A stretch of DNA of 64,000 nt from Rebecca billardiae RCC1528 (taxonomy: Eukaryota > Protista > Haptophyta): contig OZ251253.1 in assembly GCA_965240325.2 (NCBI GenBank), forward strand, positions 248,001-312,000, written 5' to 3'. The translations under genes and the position numbers were made by a program. Every line of letters starts with the position of its first letter. Position 1 is the first letter of the stretch. Of this stretch, positions 5,440 to 28,099 are shown one piece after another. The notes under the pieces are model-generated. The model ran no database searches and was not told the origin of the DNA. It worked only from the letters and a program-made list of their open reading frames with translations.

Positions 5440-8400
5440 ATGTCCCCTGCCAGCCTCGTCGGGAAGGAAGTGGTGATCATCGGCAGCGGTGCTCGTGCGC
5501 GCGTGAGCGAGTGCATCGGCGATGACCGTCTCGTGCTCGCTCCGGGCAGCACGATCCGCGACGTAGGGCCCGACCGCGTGCTCGCGCTGCCCCTCGCGCC
5601 CAGCTCCGCGCAGTACTTCAACGAGCACAACCTCGACTTCGACACGCGTGTCGGCGACGGCTTCGTCGACCCCGGCCGTATGCGCGGCGATGCTGCGCTA
5701 CCCGCGCCAGAAGATCTTGCTCGCCGTCCCGCTGGCTCGCCAGGTGGCCGCGAGGTGCTCGTGGTCGACACGCGCATCGACGCGGCCCTGCGCGATCGCA
5801 TCGAGGTGGCTCGCTCTCGGCTACAGCCCATCACGGACATGCGCGATCGCATCAAGGTGCTGGGCGCGCACGTGTCCGAGGTGCTCGGGGGCTTGACGGA
5901 CGATCTCGTCGAGCAGTCCAACAACGATATCAGCGCGCTCGTGCAGGAAAGGGGCTCGATGCTCGTGCCGCTCGGCGACATCTCGCTAGGCGTGTGCCGG
6001 CACCGCGCGCTGCTCTTCAAAGTGCTGTGCGACGCGCTCGGCATCGAGTGCGCGCTGGTGCGCGGCGACTTCGCGGGGACCAGGTCTGCTGGGGCGCACG
6101 CGTGGAACGTGGTGCACGTTTACGGCAGCGCGTACATCGTCGACGTGATGCACCGGCCGGGCGAGATCTACCGGCGAGAGGACGCGGACGCGTGTGCGCG
6201 CTACCATCGCCTCGCCGAGCGCGGCGCTGGCGGCGCTGCGCAGCATCACGGTGCCGGCCTGAACAGCCTGCCCGCGCCAGCGCCGCGTCAGCAGTGGTAC
6301 GTGCGCCCGGCCGACGTCCAGATCGAGCGCGGCGTGGATGGCGGCGAGGTGCTGCTCGGCAGCGGCGGCTTTGGGCGCGTGTACGCGGCGCGGCTGCGGG
6401 GCGCGCAGCCGGTCGCGGTGAAGCGGCTGAACGCCGCGGGGTCCGAAGCGCGCCGCGAGTTTGAGCCCGAGGTGGCGATGCTGCACCAGCTGCGCCACGC
6501 GCACATCGTGAGCTTCTACGGCGCGTGCGACGAGCCGGAGAACCTGATGATCGTCACCGAGCGCATGCGCGGTGGCAGCCTGAGCGACGCGCTCGCGATT
6601 GAGCCGACGCGCGTGGCGTGGGCGGCGGGCGGGCAGCGCATCGCGCTGCACGTGGCGTACGCGCTGCACTACCTGCACACGCTCGAGCCGCCCGTGGTGC
6701 ACTACGACGTCAAGCCGGCCAACGTGCTCCTCACCGAGGACTACAGCCTGGCCAAGCTCGCCGATGTCGGGCTGGCGCGCACCAAGTCACACTCGCGCGT
6801 GACGGTGCCAGGGCTCACGCTCGCGTTTGCCGCGCCCGAGGTGCTGCTCGGCCGCCACGCGAGCGAGAAGGCCGACGTCTTCAGCTTTGGCGTGCTCGTC
6901 GAGGTGCTGCTCACGCAGCAGCAGCCGAACGGGCGGGCGCGCGCTCGAGTGCCCGCCGGCACGCCGACGGCAGTCCGCCGCCTGCATGCGCGCTGCATGC
7001 TAGAGGAACCAGCGCTCCGGCCCAGTGCCTCCGAGCTCGTCGTGGCGCTTGAGGGCGCAGCCGATGCGGCTGAGAGGGCGGCTGGTGGCGGAGCGGCGGC
7101 GCACGCCGCTGCGCACATGGCTGCGCAGCCGTCGCCGCACGAGCCGCCCGTAGCGGTGCCGTCGCCGCCCGGGCCGCCCGCCGCAGTCGCAGGCCCCGCC
7201 GCTGCAGCTGTGCCCGGATCGGCAGCGCTGGCAGCGATGGGCTGGGCTGAGCTTTGCGCTGCCATCCTCACCGCCGCGTCCGACCCAGCCGCAGCTGAGT
7301 GCGCGCTGAGAGTAGCTGCGGCGCGGACGCGATCAGAAATCAAAGCTAGGCAGCAGGCGGCCGAGGCGGGCGCGCTCGAGGCGGTGGTGCGCGTGATGGG
7401 CGCGCACGCCGCGCACGCGGGCGTGCAGGAGCAGGCGTGCACGGCGCTGCGCCACATCTGCGCCGGCACCGACGCGGCTGGCCTCGCGCGCAAGCAGCGG
7501 GCGGCGGAGGCGGGCGCGCTCGAGGCGGCGGTGCGCGCGATGGGCGCGCACGCCGCGCACGCGGGCATGCAGGAGCAGGCGTGCTTGGCGCTGTGCAATG
7601 TCAGCGCCGGCACCGACGCGGCTGGCCTCGCGCGCAAGCAGCGGGCGGCCGAGGCGGGCGCGCTCGAGGCGGCGGTGCGCGCGATGGGCGCGCACGGCGC
7701 GCACGCGGGCGTGCAGCAGTACGGGTGCTGGGCGCTGTGCACCATCTGCGCCGGCAACGACGCGGCTGGCCACGCGCGCGCGCAGCGGGCGGCCGAGGCG
7801 GGCGCGCTCGAGGCGGCGGTGCGCGCGATGGGCGCGCACGCCGCGCACGCGGGCGTGCAGCAGTACGGGTGCTGGGCGCTGCGCAACATCTGCTTCGGCA
7901 CCGACGCGGCTGGCCTCGCGCGCAAGCAGCGGGCGGCCGAGGCGGGCGCGCTCGAGGCGGCGGTGCGCGCGATGGGCGCGCACGCCGCGCACGCGGGCGT
8001 GCAGGAGCAGGCGTGCCGGGTGCTGTGCAACATCTGCCTCGGCACCGACGCGGCTGGCCGCGCGCGCGCGCAGCGGGCGGCCGAGGCGGGCGCGCTCGAG
8101 GCGGCGGTGCGCGCGATGGGCGCGCACGCCGCGCACGCGGGCGTGCAGCAGTACGCGTGCTTGGCGCTGTGCAACATCTGTGTCGGCAGCGACGCGGCTG
8201 GCCTCGCGCGCGCGCAGCGGGCGGCCGAGGCGGGCGCGCTCGAGGCGGCGGTGCGCGCGATGGGCGCGCACGCCGCGCACGCGGGCGTGCAGCAGTACGG
8301 GTGCTGGGCGCTGTGCACCATCTGCGCCGGCAACGACGCGGCTGCCCACGCGCGCGCGCAGCGGGCGGCCGAGGCGGGCGCGCTCGAGGCGGCGGTGCGC

Positions 8401-9333
8401 GCGATGGGCGCGCACGCCGCGCACGCGGGCGTGCAGCAGTACGGGTGCTGGGCGCTGCGCAACATCTGCTTCGGCACCGACGCGGCTGGCCTCGCGCGCA
8501 AGCAGCGGGCGGCCGAGGCGGGCGCGCTCGAGGCGGCGGTGCGCGCGATGGGCGCGCACGCCGCGCACGCGGGCGTGCAGGAGCAGGCGTGCTTGGCGCT
8601 GTGCACCATCTGCGCCGGCACCGACGCGGCTGGCCTCGCGCGCGCGCAGCGGGCGGCCGAGGCGGGCGCGCTCGAGGCGGCGGTGCGCGCGATGGGCGCG
8701 CACGGCGCGCACGCGGACGTGCAGCAGTACGGGTGCTGGGCGCTGTGCAACATCTGCGCCGGCACCGACGCGGCTGGCCTCGCGCGCAAGCAGCGGGCGG
8801 CCGAGGCGGGCGCGCTCGAGGCGGCGGTGCGCGCGATGGGCGCGCACGGCGCGCACGCGGGCGTGCAGCAGTACGCGTGCATGGCGCTGTGCAACATCTG
8901 CGCTGGCACCGGCGCGGCTGTCCTCGCGCTCGAACAGCGGGCGGCCGAGGCGGGCGCGCTCGAGGCGGCGGTGCGCGCGATGGGCGCGCACGGCGCGCAC
9001 GCGGGCGTGCAGCAGTACGCGTGCTGGGCGCTGGCCAGCGTCTGCAACGGCACCGACGCGGCTGGCCTCGCGCGCGCGCAGCGGGCGGCCGAGGCGGGCG
9101 CGCTCGAGGCGGCGGTGCGCGCGATGGGCGCGCACGCCGCGCACGCGGGCGTGCAGGAGCAGGCGTGCCGGGTGCTGTGCAACATCTGCGGCGGCACCGA
9201 CGCGGCTGGCCTCGCGCGCGCGCAGCGGGCGGCCAAGGCGGGCGCGCGTGGGGCTCTCGAGGCTGCGCAGGCTGCACACTCGAGCCACAGCCAGATCAGG
9301 AGCTTGACGACGCAGCTGCTCGGCATGATATAG
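5440..9333 (+). CDS. EDR1/CTR1-like domain + TKL-type non-RD protein kinase + 13 armadillo repeats (1297 aa, intronless)
   Basis: EDR1 motifs GVCRHRALLFKVLCD, HAWNVV, YIVDVMHRPG; kinase motifs LGSGGFGRVY, VAVK, HYDVKPANVLL, DVG, APE; ARM consensus AGALEAAVRAM...VQxxACxALxNI. Confidence 0.9.
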   Translation: MSPASLVGKEVVIIGSGARARVSECIGDDRLVLAPGSTIRDVGPDRVLALPLAPSSAQYFNEHNLDFDTRVGDGFVDPGRMRGDAALPAPEDLARRPAGSPGGREVLVVDTRIDAALRDRIEVARSRLQPITDMRDRIKVLGAHVSEVLGGLTDDLVEQSNNDISALVQERGSMLVPLGDISLGVCRHRALLFKVLCDALGIECALVRGDFAGTRSAGAHAWNVVHVYGSAYIVDVMHRPGEIYRREDADACARYHRLAERGAGGAAQHHGAGLNSLPAPAPRQQWYVRPADVQIERGVDGGEVLLGSGGFGRVYAARLRGAQPVAVKRLNAAGSEARREFEPEVAMLHQLRHAHIVSFYGACDEPENLMIVTERMRGGSLSDALAIEPTRVAWAAGGQRIALHVAYALHYLHTLEPPVVHYDVKPANVLLTEDYSLAKLADVGLARTKSHSRVTVPGLTLAFAAPEVLLGRHASEKADVFSFGVLVEVLLTQQQPNGRARARVPAGTPTAVRRLHARCMLEEPALRPSASELVVALEGAADAAERAAGGGAAAHAAAHMAAQPSPHEPPVAVPSPPGPPAAVAGPAAAAVPGSAALAAMGWAELCAAILTAASDPAAAECALRVAAARTRSEIKARQQAAEAGALEAVVRVMGAHAAHAGVQEQACTALRHICAGTDAAGLARKQRAAEAGALEAAVRAMGAHAAHAGMQEQACLALCNVSAGTDAAGLARKQRAAEAGALEAAVRAMGAHGAHAGVQQYGCWALCTICAGNDAAGHARAQRAAEAGALEAAVRAMGAHAAHAGVQQYGCWALRNICFGTDAAGLARKQRAAEAGALEAAVRAMGAHAAHAGVQEQACRVLCNICLGTDAAGRARAQRAAEAGALEAAVRAMGAHAAHAGVQQYACLALCNICVGSDAAGLARAQRAAEAGALEAAVRAMGAHAAHAGVQQYGCWALCTICAGNDAAAHARAQRAAEAGALEAAVRAMGAHAAHAGVQQYGCWALRNICFGTDAAGLARKQRAAEAGALEAAVRAMGAHAAHAGVQEQACLALCTICAGTDAAGLARAQRAAEAGALEAAVRAMGAHGAHADVQQYGCWALCNICAGTDAAGLARKQRAAEAGALEAAVRAMGAHGAHAGVQQYACMALCNICAGTGAAVLALEQRAAEAGALEAAVRAMGAHGAHAGVQQYACWALASVCNGTDAAGLARAQRAAEAGALEAAVRAMGAHAAHAGVQEQACRVLCNICGGTDAAGLARAQRAAKAGARGALEAAQAAHSSHSQIRSLTTQLLGMI
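7357..9228 (+). repeat. Coding tandem array, 13 x 144 bp (48-aa ARM repeats)
   Basis: GCGGCCGAGGCGGGCGCGCTCGAG recurs every 144 bp; span 1872 = 13 x 144. Confidence 0.95.
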
Positions 9334-9363
9334 CTAGGCCGTGAGGCGGGCGCTATTGCAGGC

Positions 9364-9420
9364 TTATTATTATTATTATTATTTTCTAATATATTATTAT
9401 TATTATATTAATTTATTAAG
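9364..9420. repeat. (TAT)n microsatellite in the 3' flank of kinase-ARM gene 1 (also at about 17998 and 24571)
   Basis: TTATTATTA runs directly after each of the three stop codons. Confidence 0.85.
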
Positions 9421-9722
9421 TTCATCTACGGGCGGACCGCGTCATCGCTCGTCGGTTGCGTCATATCAAATCCCGCTGCCGCGGGCGGCCGCTAGCGCGC
9501 TGCGTGCAGTGCTAGCTACTGCGACGGGCTTGGGTCTTGGGGCTGCCCAGCAGGCCCACTCCCAGAGCGAGTCGCCGAGTGTGTGCCCGCGAACGGTTAC
9601 TACACGCGTCGCACTCGCTCCGCGAACAAATTCTGCGCGCTCTCGCGAGCTGATGATATGTACTGTGTCGTCGTCGTATCGTGTCGACCCGTAGTACGGC
9701 AGCAGCCCCACAGTGCCCGCGC

Positions 9723-10461
9723 TCACAGCGCGCCGCCGATCGCCGCGGTGATCGACACGCCGCCCAGGACGATCACCAGCGCGGTCACCGCGCCCGCGAA
9801 CCGCCCCGGGTCGACGCGCCGGTTGATCCACGTGCCGGCCACGCTCGCGACCAGCACGCCCGGCACCGCGGCGAGGCTCTGCGAGAGCAGGTTGGAGGTG
9901 AGCAGCCCGGCGGCGGCGAAGTTGTACATCGCGAGCGCCTGCACGGGCAGGAAGAAGCGCGAGAGCATCGTCCGCTGCTCCGCGGGCGACCACTCGCGCA
10001 ACGTCCCGAACACAACTGCCGGCGGGCCGGGCTCGGCCACCGCGCCGCCGAGCAGCCCGGCGCACAGCCCGAAGAGCGCCGTCTTGGCGAAGGGCAGCGT
10101 GCGCAGCTCGGCGGCGGGGCGCGCGCCGCCGCCTTGCGCGCGCTCCTCGCCCACCAGCTCGAGCGAGGGCAGCTCGCAGAAGTCCGCGTCCGGCCGCGCG
10201 CAGTCCGGGCGGCGCAGCTTCCAGCCGCCGTACCCGACGAGCAGGACTCCGACCACGCCGCGCACGAGGTGCGGGTCGAGGCTGACGAGCGCGCGCACGC
10301 CGAGGGGCACGCCGACGAGCGCGGCGGCGAAGAGCGTGAGCGACTCGACCCACCGCCCCGTCGCGCGCATCTGCCCGTCGAGCAGGTCGGTCACCAAGTT
10401 GGCCGTGACGAGCACGGACGAGACGGCGGTCACGAGCGGCGCCGCCGCCGTCACGTCGAGG
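9723..10461 (-). pseudogene. 5'-truncated TauE/SafE-family transporter (copy 1)
   Basis: Near-identical to 18355..19093, but homology stops at LDVTAAAP; the N-terminal ~115 codons are absent. Confidence 0.8.
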
Positions 10462-10893
10462 TCCGGGCGGTGAGTACGGGCTTTCCGATGGCGGCCGAGG
10501 TTCATGCATGGTCAACGCCGCCATCGGCGAGCCCGCTGCGCCGCGCACCGGCTGCTTCGTCGCCAGTGCTCGACGGAGCGCGCTGCAATTACGCGCGCCG
10601 GCGCACCGGCGCGGCGCGCGCATGCTCCGCCCGAGGTGGGGCCCAAACAAACTTGGTCACGTCCTCTCACCTCCCACTCTGTTGATCTGTGTGGCTCCTG
10701 CTCAGGGACCCACACACATCACCCGGCCTCTCCCACCCCTCTGTTGGGTCTGTGTGCGCCCGCGGGGATAGCCCGCGTGCCGGGGCCATGCGCCCAGCCA
10801 TTGCGGAGTCCACCGCGAGTTGCGACCGGCTGCCAGCGTGCGCGCAGGATGGCTGCCGATGTGCGAACGTCGGTGTAGCTGTGTGCGCCGTGC

Positions 10894-22900: not shown

Positions 22901-24540
22901 ACGCCGCGCACGCGGGCGTGCAGGAGCAGGCGTGCTGGGCGCTGCGCAACATCTGCACCGGCACCGACGCGGCTGGCCTCGCGCGCAAGCAGCGGGCGGC
23001 CGAGGCGGGCGCGCTCGAGGCGGCGGTGCGCGCGATGGGCGCGCACGCCGCGCACGTGGGCGTGCAGGAGGAGGCGTGCGCGGCGCTGTGCAACATCTGC
23101 AACGGCACCGACGCGGCTGGCCTCGCGCGCGCGCAGCGGGCGGCCGAGGCGGGCGCGCTCGAGGCGGCGGTGCGCGCGATGGGCGCGCACGCCGCGCACG
23201 CGGGCGTGCAGGAGCAGGCGTGCTGGGCGCTGCGCAACATCTGCACCGGCACCGACGCGGCTGGCCTCGCGCGCAAGCAGCGGGCGGCCGAGGCGGGCGC
23301 GCTCGAGGCGGCGGTGCGCGCGATGGGCGCGCACACCACGCACGCGGGCGTGCAGGAGCGGGCGTGCCGGGCGCTGTGCAACATCTGCAACGGCACCGAC
23401 GCGGCTGGCCTCGCGCGCGCGCACCGGGCGGCCGAGGCGGACGCGCTCGAGGCGGCGGTGCGCGCGATGGGCGCGCACGCCGCGCACGCGGGCGTGCAGC
23501 AGTACGCGTGCTGGGCGCTGCGCAACATTTGCGCCGGCGACGACGCGGCTGGCCTCGCGCGCAAGCAGCGGGCGGCCGAGGCGGGCGCGCTCGAGGCGGC
23601 GCTGCGCGCGATGGGCGCGCACGCCGCGCACGCGGGCGTGCAGGAGCAGGCGTGCTGGGCGCTGCGCAACATCTGCACCGGCACCGACGCGGCTGGCCTC
23701 GCGCGCAAGCAGCGGGCGGCCGAGGCGGGCGCGCTCGAGGCGGCGGTGCGCGCGATGGGCGCGCACGCCGCGCACGTGGGCGTGCAGGAGGAGGCGTGCG
23801 CGGCGCTGTGCAACATCTGCAACGGCACCGACGCGGCTGGCCTCGCGCGCGCGCAGCGGGCGGCCGAGGCGGGCGCGCTCGAGGCGGCGGTGCGCGCGAT
23901 GGGCGCGCACGCCGCGCACGTGGGCGTGCAGGAGCAGGCGTGCTTGGCGCTTCGCAACATCTGCGTCGGCGACGACGCGGCTGGCCTCGCGCGCAGGCAG
24001 CGGGCGGCCGAGGCGGGCGCGCTCGAGGCGGCGGTGCGCGTGATGGGCGCGCACGCCGCGCACGCGGGCGTGCAGGAGCAGGCGTGCTGGGCGCTGGTCA
24101 ACATCTGCGTCGGCGACGACGCGGCTGGCCTCGCGCGCAGGCAGCGGGCGGCCGAGGCGGGCGCGCTCGAGGCGGTGGTGCGCGCGATGGGCGCGCACGC
24201 CGCGCACGCGGACGTGCAGGAGGAGGCGTGCTGGGCGCTGTGCAACATCTGCGCCGGCACCGACGCGGCTGGCCGCGCGCGCGCGCAGCGGGCGGCCGAG
24301 GCGGGCGCGCTCGAGGCGGCGCTGCGCGCGATGGGCGCGCACGCCGCGCACGCGGGCGTGCAGCAGTACGGGTGCTGGGCGCTGCGCAACATCTGCGTCG
24401 GCGACGACGCGGCTGGCCTCGCGCGCAAGCAGCGGGCGGCCGAGGCGGGCGCGCGTGGGGCTCTCGAGGCTGCGCAGGCTGCACACTCGAGCCACAGCCA
24501 GATCAGGAGCTTGACGACGCAGGTGCTCGGCATGATATAG
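19924..24540 (+). CDS. MLKL/RPW8-like helical N-terminal domain + acidic linker + RD protein kinase + 17 armadillo repeats; one intron 21481..21645
   Basis: ATG 19924 (MVEPVSVLVFVVQAAC...); kinase motifs LGQGTFGRVY, VAIK, HRDIKSNNVLL, DFG, GTLRYMAPE; CAG|GTGCGC...CACAG|GTG intron restores YNDEQ-VKDAVRDKRDRP; same ARM array and C-cap as genes 1/2. The N-terminal domain call is less certain than the kinase and ARM calls. Confidence 0.85.
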   Translation: MVEPVSVLVFVVQAACNDAIKRLEAVRESRGKVDELRDELAFLTMWLPHAREVDASDAQRTRALRQALRQVQRVASAIDQFARVFGARKRARRYVHAVADRNRFRQLGAQLDAAENRFFRALDVVTALRVQALETRLTALHVDDAEREADELQAAADADADEDEEEDEEEDDGDLEEAAADGVTDAIASAVAGAFGEEAGEAARGACDALRTDLAADARALIAELREQADADADADPEHSRRREVAAAARGRGRDGLRRMADEAERSLEAATQRAQVARTTGRPRAEWPAEYEMRADAVRRGELLGQGTFGRVYAGTLVASGEPVAIKEALQPGLGAVEMDELRRELVVQATARHVNVLGALGAHTEAPPPPFIVLERARHSLRAALGGAHGQLSDAAAAACMRDVAAGILFLHSQRVHHRDIKSNNVLLGADDRWKLADFGLATVKATTRHTLNSASTATTAHAGGTLRYMAPELLGISRSGARPMGDKVDSFAFAMLIYELLTRKLPWSIEGYNDEQVRQAPPLPRVIAATRQAPQLPRASRAGGWRAGRADVLTTGFRPRAAARPPPPRAQVKDAVRDKRDRPRVPRAALAGAPALQRARDVMVGLWRHEATERTAVTRDVVAELDEVARLLAPPPPPPSDEELRAMGWAELCSALNEAPHADAAQRVAGEMSSRTHAGDTARPEAAEAGALEAVVRAMGAHAAHAGVQRTACWALRNICAGTDAAGLARAQRAAEAGALEVAVRAMGAHAAHADVQLAACSALCNICKGTDAAGPARAQRAAEAGALEAAVRAMGAHAAHAGVQQHGCWALCNICNGTDAAGPARAQRAAEAGALEAAVRAMGAHAAHAGVQEQACWALRNICYGDDAAGLARKQRAAEAGALEAAVRAMGAHGAHAGVQQYGCWALCNICNGTDAAGLARAHRAAEADALEAAVRAMGAHAAHAGVQQYACWALRNICAGDDAAGLARKQRAAEAGALEAALRAMGAHAAHAGVQEQACWALRNICTGTDAAGLARKQRAAEAGALEAAVRAMGAHAAHVGVQEEACAALCNICNGTDAAGLARAQRAAEAGALEAAVRAMGAHAAHAGVQEQACWALRNICTGTDAAGLARKQRAAEAGALEAAVRAMGAHTTHAGVQERACRALCNICNGTDAAGLARAHRAAEADALEAAVRAMGAHAAHAGVQQYACWALRNICAGDDAAGLARKQRAAEAGALEAALRAMGAHAAHAGVQEQACWALRNICTGTDAAGLARKQRAAEAGALEAAVRAMGAHAAHVGVQEEACAALCNICNGTDAAGLARAQRAAEAGALEAAVRAMGAHAAHVGVQEQACLALRNICVGDDAAGLARRQRAAEAGALEAAVRVMGAHAAHAGVQEQACWALVNICVGDDAAGLARRQRAAEAGALEAVVRAMGAHAAHADVQEEACWALCNICAGTDAAGRARAQRAAEAGALEAALRAMGAHAAHAGVQQYGCWALRNICVGDDAAGLARKQRAAEAGARGALEAAQAAHSSHSQIRSLTTQVLGMI
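21988..24435 (+). repeat. Coding tandem array, 17 x 144 bp ARM repeats
   Basis: Span 2448 = 17 x 144. Confidence 0.95.
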
Positions 24541-24570
24541 CGCTAGGCCGAGGCGGGCGCTATTGCAGGC

Positions 24571-24607
<37 letters not shown>

Positions 24608-24640
24608 TTATTCCAATAATAATTATAATAATAAGTTCAT

Positions 24641-26386
24641 GTCTAGCCGTCCTCGTGAACGCCGACGCCAACTGCTGGCCGAAGGTGGGCACGCCGCCTG
24701 GCATGTCGATGCCGAGGCGGCTGCGTGTGTTCCTACTCAGTGGGATTTACGTGTCCTCATGCCTTGGCGAGCGGCAGCAGATGCGGTGGGCATGCCGCTC
24801 GCCGTCGACGAGACGCGGTGCGTGAGTGATCCCGCGCGGACGTCCGCTGACGGAAGGCTGAGCGCCTGCGGACTCGTCGACTGAACCTCCACCTGACCGC
24901 CCGGGAGCAGCACTGCCGGGGACCTAACCTGAAAAACCCAATCGTGTTGGGAGGCAGGGGGTCACATGAGCCCTAAGTGCAGCGCCGCAAGACCGGGCGG
25001 TCGGACGGCGGGTGTTGTGATCCCGCCGCCCGAGCACCAGACCAACGGGCCCTGGGTGGGCGGGTTGCCGAAAGATGTTGGTCGGTGCACGCGACGCGCC
25101 ACCCGCGTGCGAGCCGCCGCCGCCGGCGACGCAGGACGAGCTTGGCTGGAGCCATCTCGCACGCCGCGCCTGGCGAAGCAGGCGGCAGAGGCCGGCGCCG
25201 GAAACCGATCTCCTCGGCAGAAAGAACAACCCGGACAGACTGTTTGTCCGGGAGCAGCGCCCTTTGAGGCGATGGTCTGGTAGAGGGCGATGTGGCTGAT
25301 GAGCGGCGCTGGCGCCCGGCGTTCTTGTCGTCCTCTTAGACAATCAGTTATTGTACCAATAACCCCACGTCTAGCCGTCCTCGTGAACGCCGACGCCAAC
25401 TGCTGGCCGAAGGTGGGCACGCCGCCTGGCATGTCGATGCCGAGGCGGCTGCGTGTGTTCCTACTCAGTGGGATTTACGTGTCCTCATGCCTTGGCGAGC
25501 GGCAGCAGATGCGGTGGGCATGCCGCTCGCCGTCGACGAGACGCGGTGCGTGAGTGATCCCGTTTCATGGTGTGTTGGGGAGCACCGCGTGGAGGAGAAT
25601 CCCATTGAGCGATGGGAAGGAAAGGGGCAAGGCACGTGTGAGTCGCGCACGCACGAGGGCCGGCCAGCGGGGGCTGGGCAGGTGGGGCAGTGCGAGTGAG
25701 ACGGAACCCGAATAGGAGAGACAGCAGGCAGCCGGCCCCGCGGGCGCGGCGCTGCGGAAGCAGGAGAAGGCTAGACGGCCTTTGCGGATGCTGTGAACGG
25801 CCCGCGGGTGCGCACGGGGCCCGGCGCGCGGTGTGCCGCCAGCGGTCCTTGTGTAGGAGCCGGCTGGCGTTGGCACCGGGGCGATCCCGAGGCAGGGCGG
25901 GAGAGATGGAGCAGCGATCCGCGTGGGGGCGCACCCACGGAGGAGGAGGCATGTGGCGAAGAGGGAACGGTGCGATCGGGGCGGGTGCGGAAGAGCCACA
26001 GGGTGCGCACGCACACAGAGAGAGAAGAGGCGGTGGCCCGAAGCGCGAGGGGGCGCGATGCGGAGCGTTGCTTACCGCCGAGTTGCCGAAAGATGTTGGT
26101 CGGTGCACGCGACGCGCCACCCGCGTGCGAGCCGCCGCCGCCGGCGACGCAGGACGAGCTTGGCTGGAGCCATCTCGCACGCCGCGCCTGGCGAAGCAGG
26201 CGGCAGAGGCCGGCGCCGGAAACCGATCTCCTCGGCAGAAAGAACAACCCGGACAGACTGTTTGTCCGGGAGCAGCGCCCTTTGAGGCGATGGTCTGGTA
26301 GAGGGCGATGTGGCTGATGAGCGGCGCTGGCGCCCGGCGTTCTTGTCGTCCTCTTAGACAATCAGTTATTGTACCAATAACCCCAC
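24641..26386 (-). mobile_element. 1746-bp non-autonomous split-direct-repeat element (TOC1/PAT/Ngaro-like, DIRS order candidate)
   Basis: 194-bp repeat at 24641..24834 and 25369..25562; 305-bp repeat at 25064..25368 and 26082..26386; absent from the paralogous sites at about 9425 and 18059; no TSD or convincing ORF. Confidence 0.7.
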
Positions 26387-26682
26387 ATATAGGACCGCGT
26401 CAGCCGTACGTGCTCGTCGCGGTTGCGTCATATCAAATCCCGCTGCCGCGGGCGGCCGCTAGCGCGCTGCGCGCAGTGCTAGCTACTGCGACGGGCTTGG
26501 GTCTTGGGGCTGCCCAGCAGGCCCACTCCCAGAGCGAGTCGCCGAGTGTGTGCCCGCGAACGGTCACTACACGCGTCGCACTCGCTCCGCGAACAAATTC
26601 TGCGCGCTCGCGCGAGCTGATGATGTAGTGTCGTCGTCGTATCGTGTCCGCCCGTACGGCAGCAGCCCCACAGTGCCCGCGC

Positions 26683-27768
26683 TCACAGCGCGCCGCCGAT
26701 CGCCGCGGTGATCGACACGCCGCCCAGGACGATCACCAGCGCGGTCACCGCCCCCGCGAACCGCCCCGGGTCGACGCGCCGGTTGATCCACGTGCCGGCC
26801 ACGCTCGCGACCAGCACGCCCGGCACCGCGGCGAGGCTCTGCGAGAGCAGGTTGGAGGTGAGCAGCCCGGCGGCGGCGAAGTTGTACATCGCGAGCGCCT
26901 GCACGGGCAGGAAGAAGCGCGAGAGCATCGTCCGCTGCTCCGCGGGCGACCACTCGCGCAACGTCCCGAACACAACTGCCGGCGGGCCGGGCTCGGCCAC
27001 CGCGCCGCCGAGCAGCCCGGCGCACAGCCCGAAGAGCGCCGTCTTGGCGAAGGGCAGCGTGCGCAGCTCGGCGGCGGGGCGCGCGCCGCCGCCTTGCGCG
27101 CGCTCCTCGCCCACCAGCTCGAGCGAGGGCAGCTCGCAGAAGTCCGCGTCCGGCCGCGCGCAGTCCGGGCGGCGCAGCTTCCAGCCGCCGTACCCGACGA
27201 GCAGGACTCCGACCACGCCGCGCACGAGGTGCGGGTCGAGGCTGACGAGCGCGCGCACGCCGAGGGGCACGCCGACGAGCGCGGCGGCGAAGAGCGTGAG
27301 CGACTCGACCCACCGCCCCGTCGCGCGCATCTGCCCGTCGAGCAGGTCGGTCACCAAGTTGGCCGTGACGAGCACGGACGAGACGGCGGTCACGAGCGGC
27401 GCCGCCGCCGTCACGTCGAGGTGGAAGAAGAGGGAGAGGAGCGGCATCGCGAGGATGGCGTCGCCGAAGCCGAAGACGGCGGCGAAGAGCGAGGTGAACG
27501 CGAAGAGGCCGACGATGCCCAGGTTGACGCCGCTCAGCGCGGCGAGCACCATCGACTTGGCCGACCCCGCGGCGAGCGTCGCGGTCGGCGTCGCGACGAG
27601 CGCGGACTTTGCGCCGACGGCGCTCAGCACGTCGACTGCGGCGGTGTCGAGCAGCATCACCGCGCGGCTGCGCACGGGCGCACTCATCGACGGCAGGCTC
27701 GCAGGCCGCGGGATCGCGCAGCCGCCCGGAAGGCATAGCGCCAGGGCGGGGAGGGCGACGAGCCGCAT
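26683..27768 (-). CDS. TauE/SafE family membrane protein, 361 aa (copy 3)
   Basis: Same 1086-bp length and near identity to 18355..19440. Confidence 0.8.
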   Translation of the reverse strand: MRLVALPALALCLPGGCAIPRPASLPSMSAPVRSRAVMLLDTAAVDVLSAVGAKSALVATPTATLAAGSAKSMVLAALSGVNLGIVGLFAFTSLFAAVFGFGDAILAMPLLSLFFHLDVTAAAPLVTAVSSVLVTANLVTDLLDGQMRATGRWVESLTLFAAALVGVPLGVRALVSLDPHLVRGVVGVLLVGYGGWKLRRPDCARPDADFCELPSLELVGEERAQGGGARPAAELRTLPFAKTALFGLCAGLLGGAVAEPGPPAVVFGTLREWSPAEQRTMLSRFFLPVQALAMYNFAAAGLLTSNLLSQSLAAVPGVLVASVAGTWINRRVDPGRFAGAVTALVIVLGGVSITAAIGGAL

Positions 27769-28099
27769 CTTTCCCCAAGCCCGTCCAAATCGGGCGTACT
27801 TCCGGTGACGATTCGCCCCAAGCTGGTCGTTTTTTTTGGAGCGTGATCTCAACATCTCGCCAAATCTCCTCGAGCTCCCAAGTAATTAATTAAAAGCTGA
27901 GATCGCTGCCACTATTGAGGTTGTATGCACTGCATCGTTAAATCATTCTCGAGAAGCAGTCGTCCATCAGATCGATGAAATCTCATCGAGTCCACTGAGC
28001 AAGCAAGCACTCTCCGGCAACGCGGCATCTGAGGCACGCGGCGCGTCCTGTCCGCAACAGCGGCGGCACCAGCCCAGCGCGGCGCACGCGGCTCACGCA

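What the first reader, a model, noticed from the sequence alone, without database searches (positions are those of the whole stretch)
7230..24570. Effector-domain swapping: the same ARM cassette on two unrelated kinase modules
Seen: genes 1/2 (EDR1 + HYD/DVG kinase, intronless) and gene 3 (helical NTD + HRD/DFG kinase, one intron) share no obvious upstream similarity. They converge at a shared N-cap starting GCGATG(G/A)GCTGGGCTGAGCT (AMGWAELC at about 7234 and 21868; AMSWAELC at 15292), each after a Pro-rich hinge. From there they share the repeat unit, the C-cap AGARGALEAAQAAHSSHSQIRSLTTQ(L/V)LGMI, the 3' (TAT)n and the downstream TauE gene. Inference: sensor and signalling halves recombine as modules, like N-terminal domain swapping in fungal and plant NLRs.
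Basis: partly seen in the sequence, partly recalled or inferred. Interest (0 to 1): 0.75.

Follow-up and report, generated by a model that had tools for sequence, protein, structure and literature searches.

The report
Shared sensor array on two kinases
Three neighbouring genes of a GC-rich alga carry one pool of near-identical, surface-variable armadillo repeats behind two different kinase heads, because the repeat arrays are copied between neighbours, and the wider family mixes signalling heads and repeat tails much as fungal immune receptors do.

Summary
Genes 1 and 2 (EDR1-like domain plus HYD/DVG kinase) and gene 3 (helical head plus HRD/DFG kinase) share a 144-nt (48-residue) armadillo unit, the C-terminal cap, a (TAT)n tract and a TauE gene. 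TauE lies on the minus strand, and copy 1 lacks its first 115 codons.

The hinge breakpoint does not hold. After a 24-nt island (AMGWAELC), 93 nt of N-cap are unrelated (45% identity). Shared sequence starts at repeat 1 and ends 2 nt past the TauE start codon.

Gene 3 is not a new fusion:
- Its kinase groups (99/97) with three other armadillo-tailed kinases.
- A Diacronema lutheri protein has the same head-kinase-armadillo layout from end to end.
- Synonymous divergence between the arrays (0.03-0.05) equals that within arrays, and 3' flank dS is below 0.01, against 0.043 for the gene 1/gene 2 heads.

I read this as recurrent gene conversion or unequal exchange between neighbouring arrays.

True head/tail swaps do occur elsewhere in the genome. 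The EDR1-kinase head carries either armadillo or one-per-exon LRR tails, at 91% kinase identity. Armadillo tails also follow SAM and caspase domains.

Other notes of this scan cover this same stretch; none concern other DNA. No function is shown.

The parts
5440..9333 (+). Gene 1, one open reading frame of 1297 aa. EDR1/CTR1 peptidase-like domain (aa 56-243), HYD/DVG kinase (aa 305-535), Pro-rich hinge, N-cap (7234-7353), 13 armadillo units of 48 aa (7354-9225), C-cap (9226-9330).
13495..17967 (+). Gene 2, one open reading frame of 1490 aa, a paralogue of gene 1. N-cap 15292-15411, 17 units (15412-17859), C-cap 17860-17964. Head 97.8% nt identical to gene 1 (dS 0.043); end repeats 99-100% identical; interior repeats 93-97%.
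19924..24540 (+). Gene 3. Helical head (about 160-aa four-helix bundle plus an acidic linker), HRD/DFG kinase, candidate intron 21481-21645, Pro hinge, own N-cap, 17 units (21985-24432), C-cap 24433-24537.
21868..21891 (+). 24-nt island encoding AMGWAELC, 22-23/24 identical to genes 1/2, C8a and C11. Kinase-B paralogues match at only 8-16/24. Genome-wide the motif occurs six times, five of them on EDR1-kinase genes.
21892..21984 (+). N-cap interior private to gene 3: 45% nt identity to genes 1/2, and no close relative anywhere in the genome.
21985..27770 (.). Block shared with gene 2 (15412-19442) and, up to 10462, with gene 1. It holds the armadillo array, C-cap, 3' UTR with (TAT)n and the TauE coding sequence. 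The left edge is at repeat 1; the right edge is 2 nt past the TauE ATG.
24640..26392 (.). 1,752-bp mobile element inserted in the 3' flank of gene 3. More than 40 copies at 97-100% identity genome-wide.
26683..27768 (-). TauE/SafE copy 3, full coding sequence (Pfam TauE 1.5e-21).
18355..19440 (-). TauE copy 2, full coding sequence, 99% aa identical to copy 3. It lies head to head with gene 3, about 480 bp apart.
9723..10460 (-). TauE copy 1, lacking codons 1-115. Followed by a 2.1-kb block (10462-12598) that recurs upstream of the window.

Best explanation
Genes 1, 2 and 3 are members of two old kinase-armadillo receptor-like lineages that lie side by side in the same orientation. Lineage A is an EDR1-like domain plus a non-RD Raf-like kinase. 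Lineage B is a four-helix-bundle head plus an RD kinase.

Their 48-residue armadillo arrays, together with the C-cap, the 3' UTR and the convergent TauE gene, are kept near-identical by repeated gene conversion or unequal exchange between the neighbouring copies. The heads, hinges and N-cap interiors stay outside the exchanged block. As a result one pool of repeat variants is presented on two different signalling modules.

The repeats differ almost only at helix-3 surface positions. The likely role (inferred, not shown) is a cytoplasmic ligand or peptide sensor whose specificity is reshuffled by repeat exchange and read out by the N-terminal kinase or effector.

Genuine head/tail reassortment at the hinge also happens in this family, on a longer time scale.
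For: Breakpoint. Gene 3 versus gene 1 DNA identity is: hinge 58%, 24-nt island 96%, N-cap interior 45%, repeat 1 90%, repeat 2 95%, C-cap 98%.

One repeat pool.
- The 144-nt consensus of the three arrays is identical at every framework site. C8a and C11 differ from it at 15-20 sites, synonymous ones included.
- Synonymous differences per site between arrays are 0.031-0.047, against 0.022-0.053 within arrays and 0.166 versus C8a.

Recurrence.
- dS is 0.043 for the gene 1/gene 2 heads but 0.005-0.008 for the three TauE copies, and 0 in the C-cap.
- Promoter identity between genes 1 and 2 is only 88.7%.
- Repeat 1 of gene 3 has pS 0.10 with private synonymous codons, whereas the last repeat has pS 0.

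An old armadillo tail on gene 3.
- In the kinase tree gene 3 joins C15b, C25 and C15c with 99/97 support, and all three are armadillo-tailed.
- D. lutheri KFE25_004589 aligns with gene 3 from residue 2 to 946 and has 48-residue units after '...MSWPQLV'.
- The N-cap motif W-x-[EQ]-[LVI] is family-wide.

Sensor surface.
- pN/pS is 2.3 over the whole unit.
- The variable positions are 26, 27, 30, 33, 34 and 37.
- The units align to designed armadillo proteins and importin-alpha, with unit positions 27, 30 and 34 opposite their helix-3 E, W and N.
- That these are the peptide-contacting residues is my own knowledge of that literature.

Family-level swaps.
Against: - No single simple crossover reproduces the present gene order. 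An unequal crossover between the arrays of genes 2 and 3 predicts a second kinase-B head after TauE copy 3, and none exists.
- The direction of transfer is unresolved. The C-cap of genes 1/2 differs from that of other EDR1-kinase genes, which hints that lineage A may have been the recipient.
- The dS values for the flank rest on 1-3 substitutions.
- The 24-nt A-like island inside gene 3's N-cap is unexplained. It could be a micro-conversion tract or plain conservation.
- No reads, transcripts or second strain were available, so neither assembly fidelity nor expression is shown.
- Ligand binding and any defence role are inference only.
Confidence: 0.62

Rival explanations
1. A single modular swap at the Pro-rich hinge placed a complete armadillo cassette (N-cap to C-cap plus 3' flank) onto an unrelated kinase, creating gene 3.
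For: The kinases fall in different clades. Gene 3 carries the A-type AMGWAELC island, which is otherwise found only on EDR1-kinase genes. Hinge-level swaps do occur in the family.
Against: The 93 nt after the island are unrelated (45% identity), whereas all A-type N-caps keep DPAAAECALR. The closest kinase paralogues of gene 3, and a D. lutheri homologue of its whole length, already carry armadillo tails.
Confidence: 0.1
2. A one-off segmental duplication or non-allelic recombination, with breakpoints in repeat 1 and at the TauE start codon, copied the block once. There is no continuing exchange.
For: Both block edges are sharp. The flank is about 98% identical in all copies.
Against: The flank is younger than the gene 1/gene 2 heads (dS 0.005-0.008 versus 0.043), so at least two events after that duplication are needed. 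Divergence declines from 5' to 3' across gene 3's array. The arrays are not differentiated at synonymous sites, although their interiors have been reshuffled.
Confidence: 0.2
3. An assembly artefact. Near-identical 144-nt repeats caused a wrong join, so the gene 3 head is not truly attached to this array and flank.
For: Arrays of 2-2.5 kb at more than 90% unit identity are hard to assemble. No reads were available.
Against: Gene 3's array has its own unit order and private codons in repeats 1 and 2. Its flank carries a unique transposon insertion and private substitutions. The reading frame is intact across every junction. The assembly is highly contiguous, at 41 contigs for 72 Mb.
Confidence: 0.05

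Closest known systems
Podospora anserina nwd/hnwd NACHT-WD genes and fungal NLRs with highly conserved repeats (Dyrka et al. 2014, PMC4986451, citing Paoletti 2007 and Chevanne 2010)
   Same: Highly similar repeats with a few hypervariable positions. Variable repeat number. Repeats exchanged within and between paralogues that carry different N-terminal domains. Combinatorial pairing of effector and repeat domains.
   Different: No NOD (NACHT or NB-ARC) domain here. The repeats are armadillo, a type not listed for fungal NLRs (WD, ANK, TPR). The heads are kinases. The organism is an alga. The exchange also carries a neighbouring gene along.
Ectocarpus LRR-ROCO and NB-ARC-TPR candidate receptors (Zambounis et al. 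2012, PMC3341825)
   Same: Algal, fast-evolving, repeat-based candidate receptors under diversifying selection. The LRR-tailed paralogues here also have one repeat per exon.
   Different: The armadillo arrays are intronless and evolve by in-frame unit exchange, not exon shuffling. The signalling modules differ.
Plant EDR1/CTR1/SIS8 Raf-like kinases
   Same: An EDR1_CTR1 peptidase-like domain (PF14381) lies N-terminal to a TKL/Raf-like kinase. Identity over the kinase is 33-36%.
   Different: The plant proteins end with the kinase. Here a hinge and a repeat tail follow, and the kinase has HYD/DVG in place of HRD/DFG.
MLKL and plant CC/RPW8-type four-helix-bundle executioner domains
   Same: Gene 3 has an N-terminal four-helix bundle followed by a kinase fold. 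There are weak Pfam matches to Rx_N (0.022) and MLKL_N (0.11). The top ESM Atlas clusters are MLKL_N (0.92). A homologue, P0003, reaches the MLKL_N cut-off.
   Different: The kinase keeps VAIK/HRD/DFG, so it is not a pseudokinase. The structure search returned only generic helical bundles. A long armadillo tail follows.
Designed armadillo repeat proteins and importin-alpha
   Same: These are the closest solved sequences (E 2.9e-22). The helix-3 W/N register is conserved.
   Different: The unit is 48 rather than 42 residues. The canonical binding positions are the ones that vary here.

Membership tests
Armadillo-repeat proteins (Pfam PF00514) | Repeats score above the Arm gathering cut-off and align in register with solved armadillo proteins | tested here: met
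   Arm scores 107-250 bits against a cut-off of 20.6. Alignment to designed armadillo proteins and importin-alpha.
EDR1/CTR1-type Raf-like kinases | PF14381 domain N-terminal to a protein kinase domain | tested here: met
   PF14381 at 1e-28 (aa 56-243) and Pkinase at 4e-39 (aa 305-535) in genes 1 and 2.
EDR1/CTR1-type Raf-like kinases | The kinase is the C-terminal domain, with canonical HRD/DFG motifs | tested here: not met
   A tail of 700-900 residues follows the kinase, and the motifs read HYD and DVG.
NLR / STAND receptors | Central NACHT or NB-ARC nucleotide-binding domain | tested here: not met
   No NOD family appears in the Pfam scans of any of the 20 family members examined.
NLR / STAND receptors | Variable N-terminal effector domains combined with C-terminal superstructure-forming repeats | tested here: met
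   Heads found: EDR1-kinase, helical head plus kinase, SAM, caspase. Tails found: armadillo or LRR.
MLKL-like proteins | N-terminal MLKL_N-type four-helix bundle | tested here: inconclusive
   Pfam MLKL_N E 0.11 and Rx_N E 0.022, both below cut-off. ESM Atlas score 0.92. The AlphaFold model (pLDDT 85) is a four-helix bundle, but it matches only generic bundles.
MLKL-like proteins | Catalytically dead pseudokinase | tested here: not met
   VAIK, HRD and DFG are all intact in gene 3.
Concertedly evolving repeat arrays (gene conversion or unequal exchange between paralogues) | Synonymous divergence between paralogous arrays no greater than within arrays, and lower than in flanking unique sequence, with sharp block edges | tested here: met

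The most novel reading that the evidence does not exclude
This alga has a NOD-less, intracellular recognition repertoire. Hypervariable 48-residue armadillo arrays (and one-per-exon LRR arrays) act as an exchangeable specificity library. The library is shared by conversion between neighbouring genes and is wired to different executioner or signalling heads: an MLKL/CC-like bundle plus kinase, an EDR1 peptidase-like domain plus a non-RD kinase, a caspase, or a SAM domain. One recognised ligand, for example a viral peptide, could then trigger several outputs.
Probability: 0.3. Interest if true: 0.85.

Novelty: new variant of a known kind. Interest (0 to 1): 0.6.

Why it matters
Repeat-based receptors whose repeats are reshuffled between paralogues are known in fungi (NLRs) and have been proposed in brown algae. 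Here the same evolutionary logic appears with armadillo repeats, with kinases instead of a NOD, and with a clear physical picture: a 4-kb block with sharp edges, homogenised across three tandem genes that carry two different heads.

If the arrays are sensors, this is a tractable case of one specificity library feeding two signalling outputs, in a group of algae whose defence against viruses is poorly understood.

It also carries a caution for annotation. Identical repeat tails on different heads need not mean a recent domain fusion.

Tried and rejected
- tblastn with composition correction suppressed most armadillo hits. I used motif parsing and the genome search instead.
- Pfam did not detect the LRR tails, because each 28-residue repeat is a separate exon, and a strict regular expression found few. 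A low-stringency tblastn with one exon taken from L002 found them at about 430-nt spacing.
- My first TauE copy 1 alignment used a wrong frame. It was corrected.
- A single-sequence AlphaFold model of the gene 3 head was too poor to use (pLDDT 58). A four-sequence alignment gave pLDDT 85.
- Foldseek and VIA-align then returned only generic four-helix bundles, so the MLKL/CC assignment stays a lead.
- The exhaustive representative search with the gene 3 head found one relative only, P0012.
- Simple one-crossover models for the origin of the shared block were considered and rejected, because they predict a second kinase-B head that is absent.
- Purifying selection or convergence cannot explain the array identity, because synonymous sites are identical too.
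- The spliced gene 3 protein was not joined. Exons were searched separately by reference.
- Literature searches found no prior description of hypervariable armadillo arrays on kinases.
Full report
**Setting.** The window is contig C37:248001-312000 of a 72-Mb, 41-contig eukaryotic assembly with 60-80% GC. The nearest outside homologue of the armadillo-kinase genes is a protein of the haptophyte Diacronema lutheri, whose genome is 73% GC (PMC8379373). The nearest outside homologue of the EDR1-kinase head is from the green alga Pseudoscourfieldia marina. I therefore say only 'a GC-rich alga'.

**The observation.**
- Three long open reading frames on the + strand hold the genes: 5440-9333, 13495-17967 and 19579-24540. 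The start codon of the third is at 19924.
- Pfam gives an EDR1/CTR1 peptidase-like domain, a protein kinase and Arm repeats for genes 1 and 2. For gene 3 it gives a head with no family, a protein kinase and Arm repeats.
- Tandem Repeats Finder reports 144-nt arrays of 13.2, 17.2 and 17.1 copies.
- The C-cap of gene 3 differs from that of genes 1/2 at 2 of 108 nt. A (TAT)n tract follows each stop codon.
- A TauE/SafE gene follows each array, but on the minus strand, convergent with the kinase gene. Copies 2 and 3 hold the complete coding sequence (99% identical). Copy 1 lacks the first 115 codons.
- The flank of gene 3 is interrupted at 24640-26392 by a 1,752-bp mobile element that has more than 40 near-identical copies in the genome.
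- A GT..AG interval of 165 nt (21481-21645), in frame, sits where the Pfam kinase match stops. It is a reasonable intron candidate. I did not build the joined protein; the exons were searched separately by reference.

**Where the similarity really starts.** I aligned the three genes and the paralogue C8a from the hinge into repeat 2. Gene 3 versus gene 1 gives:

| Segment | nt identity |
|---|---|
| Hinge | 58% |
| 24-nt island (AMGWAELC) | 96% |
| Next 93 nt of N-cap | 45% |
| Repeat 1 | 90% |
| Start of repeat 2 | 95% |

- All EDR1-kinase genes with armadillo tails keep a conserved N-cap (…SDPAAAECALRVAA.RT…; 57-83% pairwise identity), including members whose kinases are only 73% identical to gene 1.
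- Gene 3 lacks that N-cap (49% or less, most of it at the two ends of the segment).
- The stretch of gene 3 from kinase exon 2 through the N-cap has no close relative anywhere in the genome.
- So the breakpoint lies inside the sensor domain, between the N-cap and repeat 1, not at the hinge.
- The W-x-[EQ]-[LVI] start of the N-cap is present in every family member whatever its head.
- The exact AM[GS]W[AP]ELC version occurs six times in the genome, five of them on EDR1-kinase genes and once on gene 3. I cannot tell whether that island is a short conversion tract or plain conservation.

**The shared block and its age.**
- At the 3' side, gene 2 and gene 3 stay alike through the C-cap, the UTR and the whole TauE coding sequence. 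They diverge 2 nt beyond the TauE start codon.
- Within the arrays, the 144-nt consensus of genes 1, 2 and 3 is identical at every framework site. It differs only in the majority state of hypervariable codons. The consensus of C8a or C11 differs at 15-20 sites, synonymous ones included.
- Mean synonymous difference between units of different genes (0.031-0.047) equals that between units of one gene (0.022-0.053). It is a quarter of the value against C8a (0.166).
- dS is 0.043 for the heads of genes 1 and 2, but 0.005-0.008 among the three TauE copies and 0 in the C-cap. The promoters of genes 1 and 2 are only 88.7% identical.
- In gene 3 the first repeat has pS 0.10 with private synonymous codons, and the last repeat has pS 0.
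- The block is therefore younger than the gene 1/gene 2 duplication, and more homogenised towards its 3' part. I read this as repeated conversion or unequal exchange among the three copies rather than one old event.
- The dS values for the flank rest on one to three substitutions, so only the direction of the contrast is safe.

**Gene 3 already had an armadillo tail.**
- The closest paralogues of its kinase are C15b, C25 and C15c (39-43% identity). All three have armadillo tails.
- In a tree of 31 kinase domains these four form a clade with 99/97 support. The ten EDR1-linked kinases form another clade (100/99), and ordinary kinases lie around them.
- Outside the genome, D. lutheri KFE25_004589 (952 aa) aligns with gene 3 from residue 2 to 946. 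It has a helical head, a kinase, a Pro-rich hinge, '…MSWPQLV…' and then 48-residue units.
- A JGI protein (P0003) has MLKL_N at the Pfam cut-off, then a kinase and an armadillo tail.
- P0012 has a gene-3-like head directly on an armadillo tail with no kinase.
- By contrast, no outside relative of the EDR1-kinase head carried Arm repeats among 64 hits. The best hit carries DUF285 repeats, and the plant hits end with the kinase. That search scored only the 8000 best word-sharing candidates of 713-2270 aa, so this absence is weak evidence.

**Real head/tail swaps in the family.**
- The EDR1-kinase head has ten copies in the genome. Six carry armadillo tails. Four (on C5, C15 twice, and C39) carry 28-residue RNI-like LRRs, one per exon at about 430-nt spacing.
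- The kinase of gene 1 is 91% identical to both C8a (armadillo) and C5a (LRR), with dS 0.11 and 0.12.
- In the EDR1+kinase tree the LRR-tailed genes form one group (78/94) nested among armadillo-tailed ones, which needs one change of tail. The kinase-only tree would need two.
- In that comparison the alignment breaks immediately after the last kinase helix, at the hinge.
- The LRR cassette, with its own N-cap, also follows a Pfam-less, non-kinase head just upstream of the window.
- The armadillo type also follows SAM_2 domains (two genes) and a caspase domain (one gene). A caspase-armadillo protein exists outside the genome as well (P0028).

**What the arrays may do.**
- Among the 47 units of the three genes, variation is concentrated at positions 26, 27, 30, 33, 34, 37, 39 and 47.
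- Nearly all common polymorphisms are non-synonymous. pN/pS over the whole unit is 2.3. The higher ratio I computed for the 'hypervariable' codons is circular, because those codons were chosen for being variable.
- The closest solved sequences are designed armadillo repeat proteins and importin-alpha. In that alignment unit positions 27, 30 and 34 lie opposite their helix-3 Glu, Trp and Asn.
- From my knowledge of that literature, those residues contact the bound peptide. I did not check this in a paper here.
- The inference is that the array is a ligand-binding, probably peptide-binding, surface under diversifying pressure.

**The heads.**
- The head of gene 3 is a four-helix bundle (AlphaFold with four sequences, pLDDT 85).
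- It has sub-threshold Pfam matches to Rx_N and MLKL_N and MLKL_N-type neighbours in the ESM Atlas.
- Structure searches gave only generic bundles.
- Its kinase keeps all catalytic motifs.
- Genes 1 and 2 have a non-RD kinase (HYD, DVG).
- The heads themselves evolve fast, with dN/dS of 0.5-0.7 between paralogues.
- None of this shows a function. A defence or recognition role is a hypothesis.

**What stays open.**
- The first origin of the duplicated armadillo-TauE block and the direction of transfer are both unresolved.
- The C-cap of genes 1/2/3 is unique to this cluster. It differs from the C-cap shared by C8a, C1a and C24, so lineage A may have received the block from gene 3's lineage.
- A single unequal crossover between the arrays predicts a second kinase-B head, which is absent.
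- A fourth, truncated TauE copy plus a 2.1-kb block lies 7-10 kb upstream of the window. This fits unequal exchange between TauE copies as the origin of the gene 1/gene 2 duplication.

**Comparison with known systems.** The nearest described behaviour is that of the Podospora nwd/hnwd genes and other fungal NLRs: highly conserved repeats with hypervariable positions, exchanged within and between paralogues with different N-terminal domains, and combinatorial domain architectures (PMC4986451). The LRR-tailed paralogues recall the one-repeat-per-exon receptors of Ectocarpus (PMC3341825). The differences here are the armadillo repeat type, the lack of any NOD domain, the kinase heads, and the co-conversion of a neighbouring gene. 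Four literature searches found no description of such armadillo arrays.

**Earlier notes of this scan.** Notes s1-341010, s1-341064, s1-341234 and s1-367729 concern this same stretch or its surroundings on the same DNA. I tested the parts that bear on this finding, as listed.

Noticed in passing
window 24640-26392: A 1,752-bp element with internal direct repeats (300 nt at 1018-nt spacing; 228 nt at 728-nt spacing). More than 40 genomic copies at 97-100% identity. It looks like a young, non-autonomous mobile element, and no Pfam-coding ORF was found in it.
   Followed up: partly
C37:238004-240899 (window -9997 to -7102) and window 9701-12598: A fourth TauE copy with the same 5' truncation as copy 1, plus a 2.1-kb GC-rich block with no Pfam match, 94% identical. 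It may mark the unequal exchange that duplicated gene 1/gene 2.
   Followed up: partly
L021:61-985 and L039:6878-9793 (C37:224878-228985): A gene just upstream of the window joins a Pfam-less, non-kinase N-terminus to the same LRR N-cap and one-per-exon 28-residue LRR cassette that follows EDR1-kinase heads elsewhere in the genome.
   Followed up: partly
L002 (C5:45559-), L003 (C15:985468-): Two EDR1-kinase-LRR genes on different contigs are almost identical (identical kinase domains). This is either a very recent segmental duplication or duplicated assembly.
   Followed up: no
window 19440-19924: TauE copy 2 and gene 3 lie head to head about 480 bp apart. The homology with TauE copy 3 stops 2 nt past the ATG, so the two full TauE copies have different promoters.
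   Followed up: partly
paralogue heads (window 5440-7059 versus L001-L008): The EDR1+kinase halves have dN/dS of 0.5-0.7 between paralogues, so the signalling heads are also evolving fast.
   Followed up: no
outside proteins P0039, P0012, P0028: Three outside architectures of interest: Pseudoscourfieldia marina has EDR1-kinase with DUF285 repeats; a JGI protein has the gene-3-type head directly on armadillo repeats with no kinase; a EukProt protein has caspase plus armadillo.
   Followed up: partly
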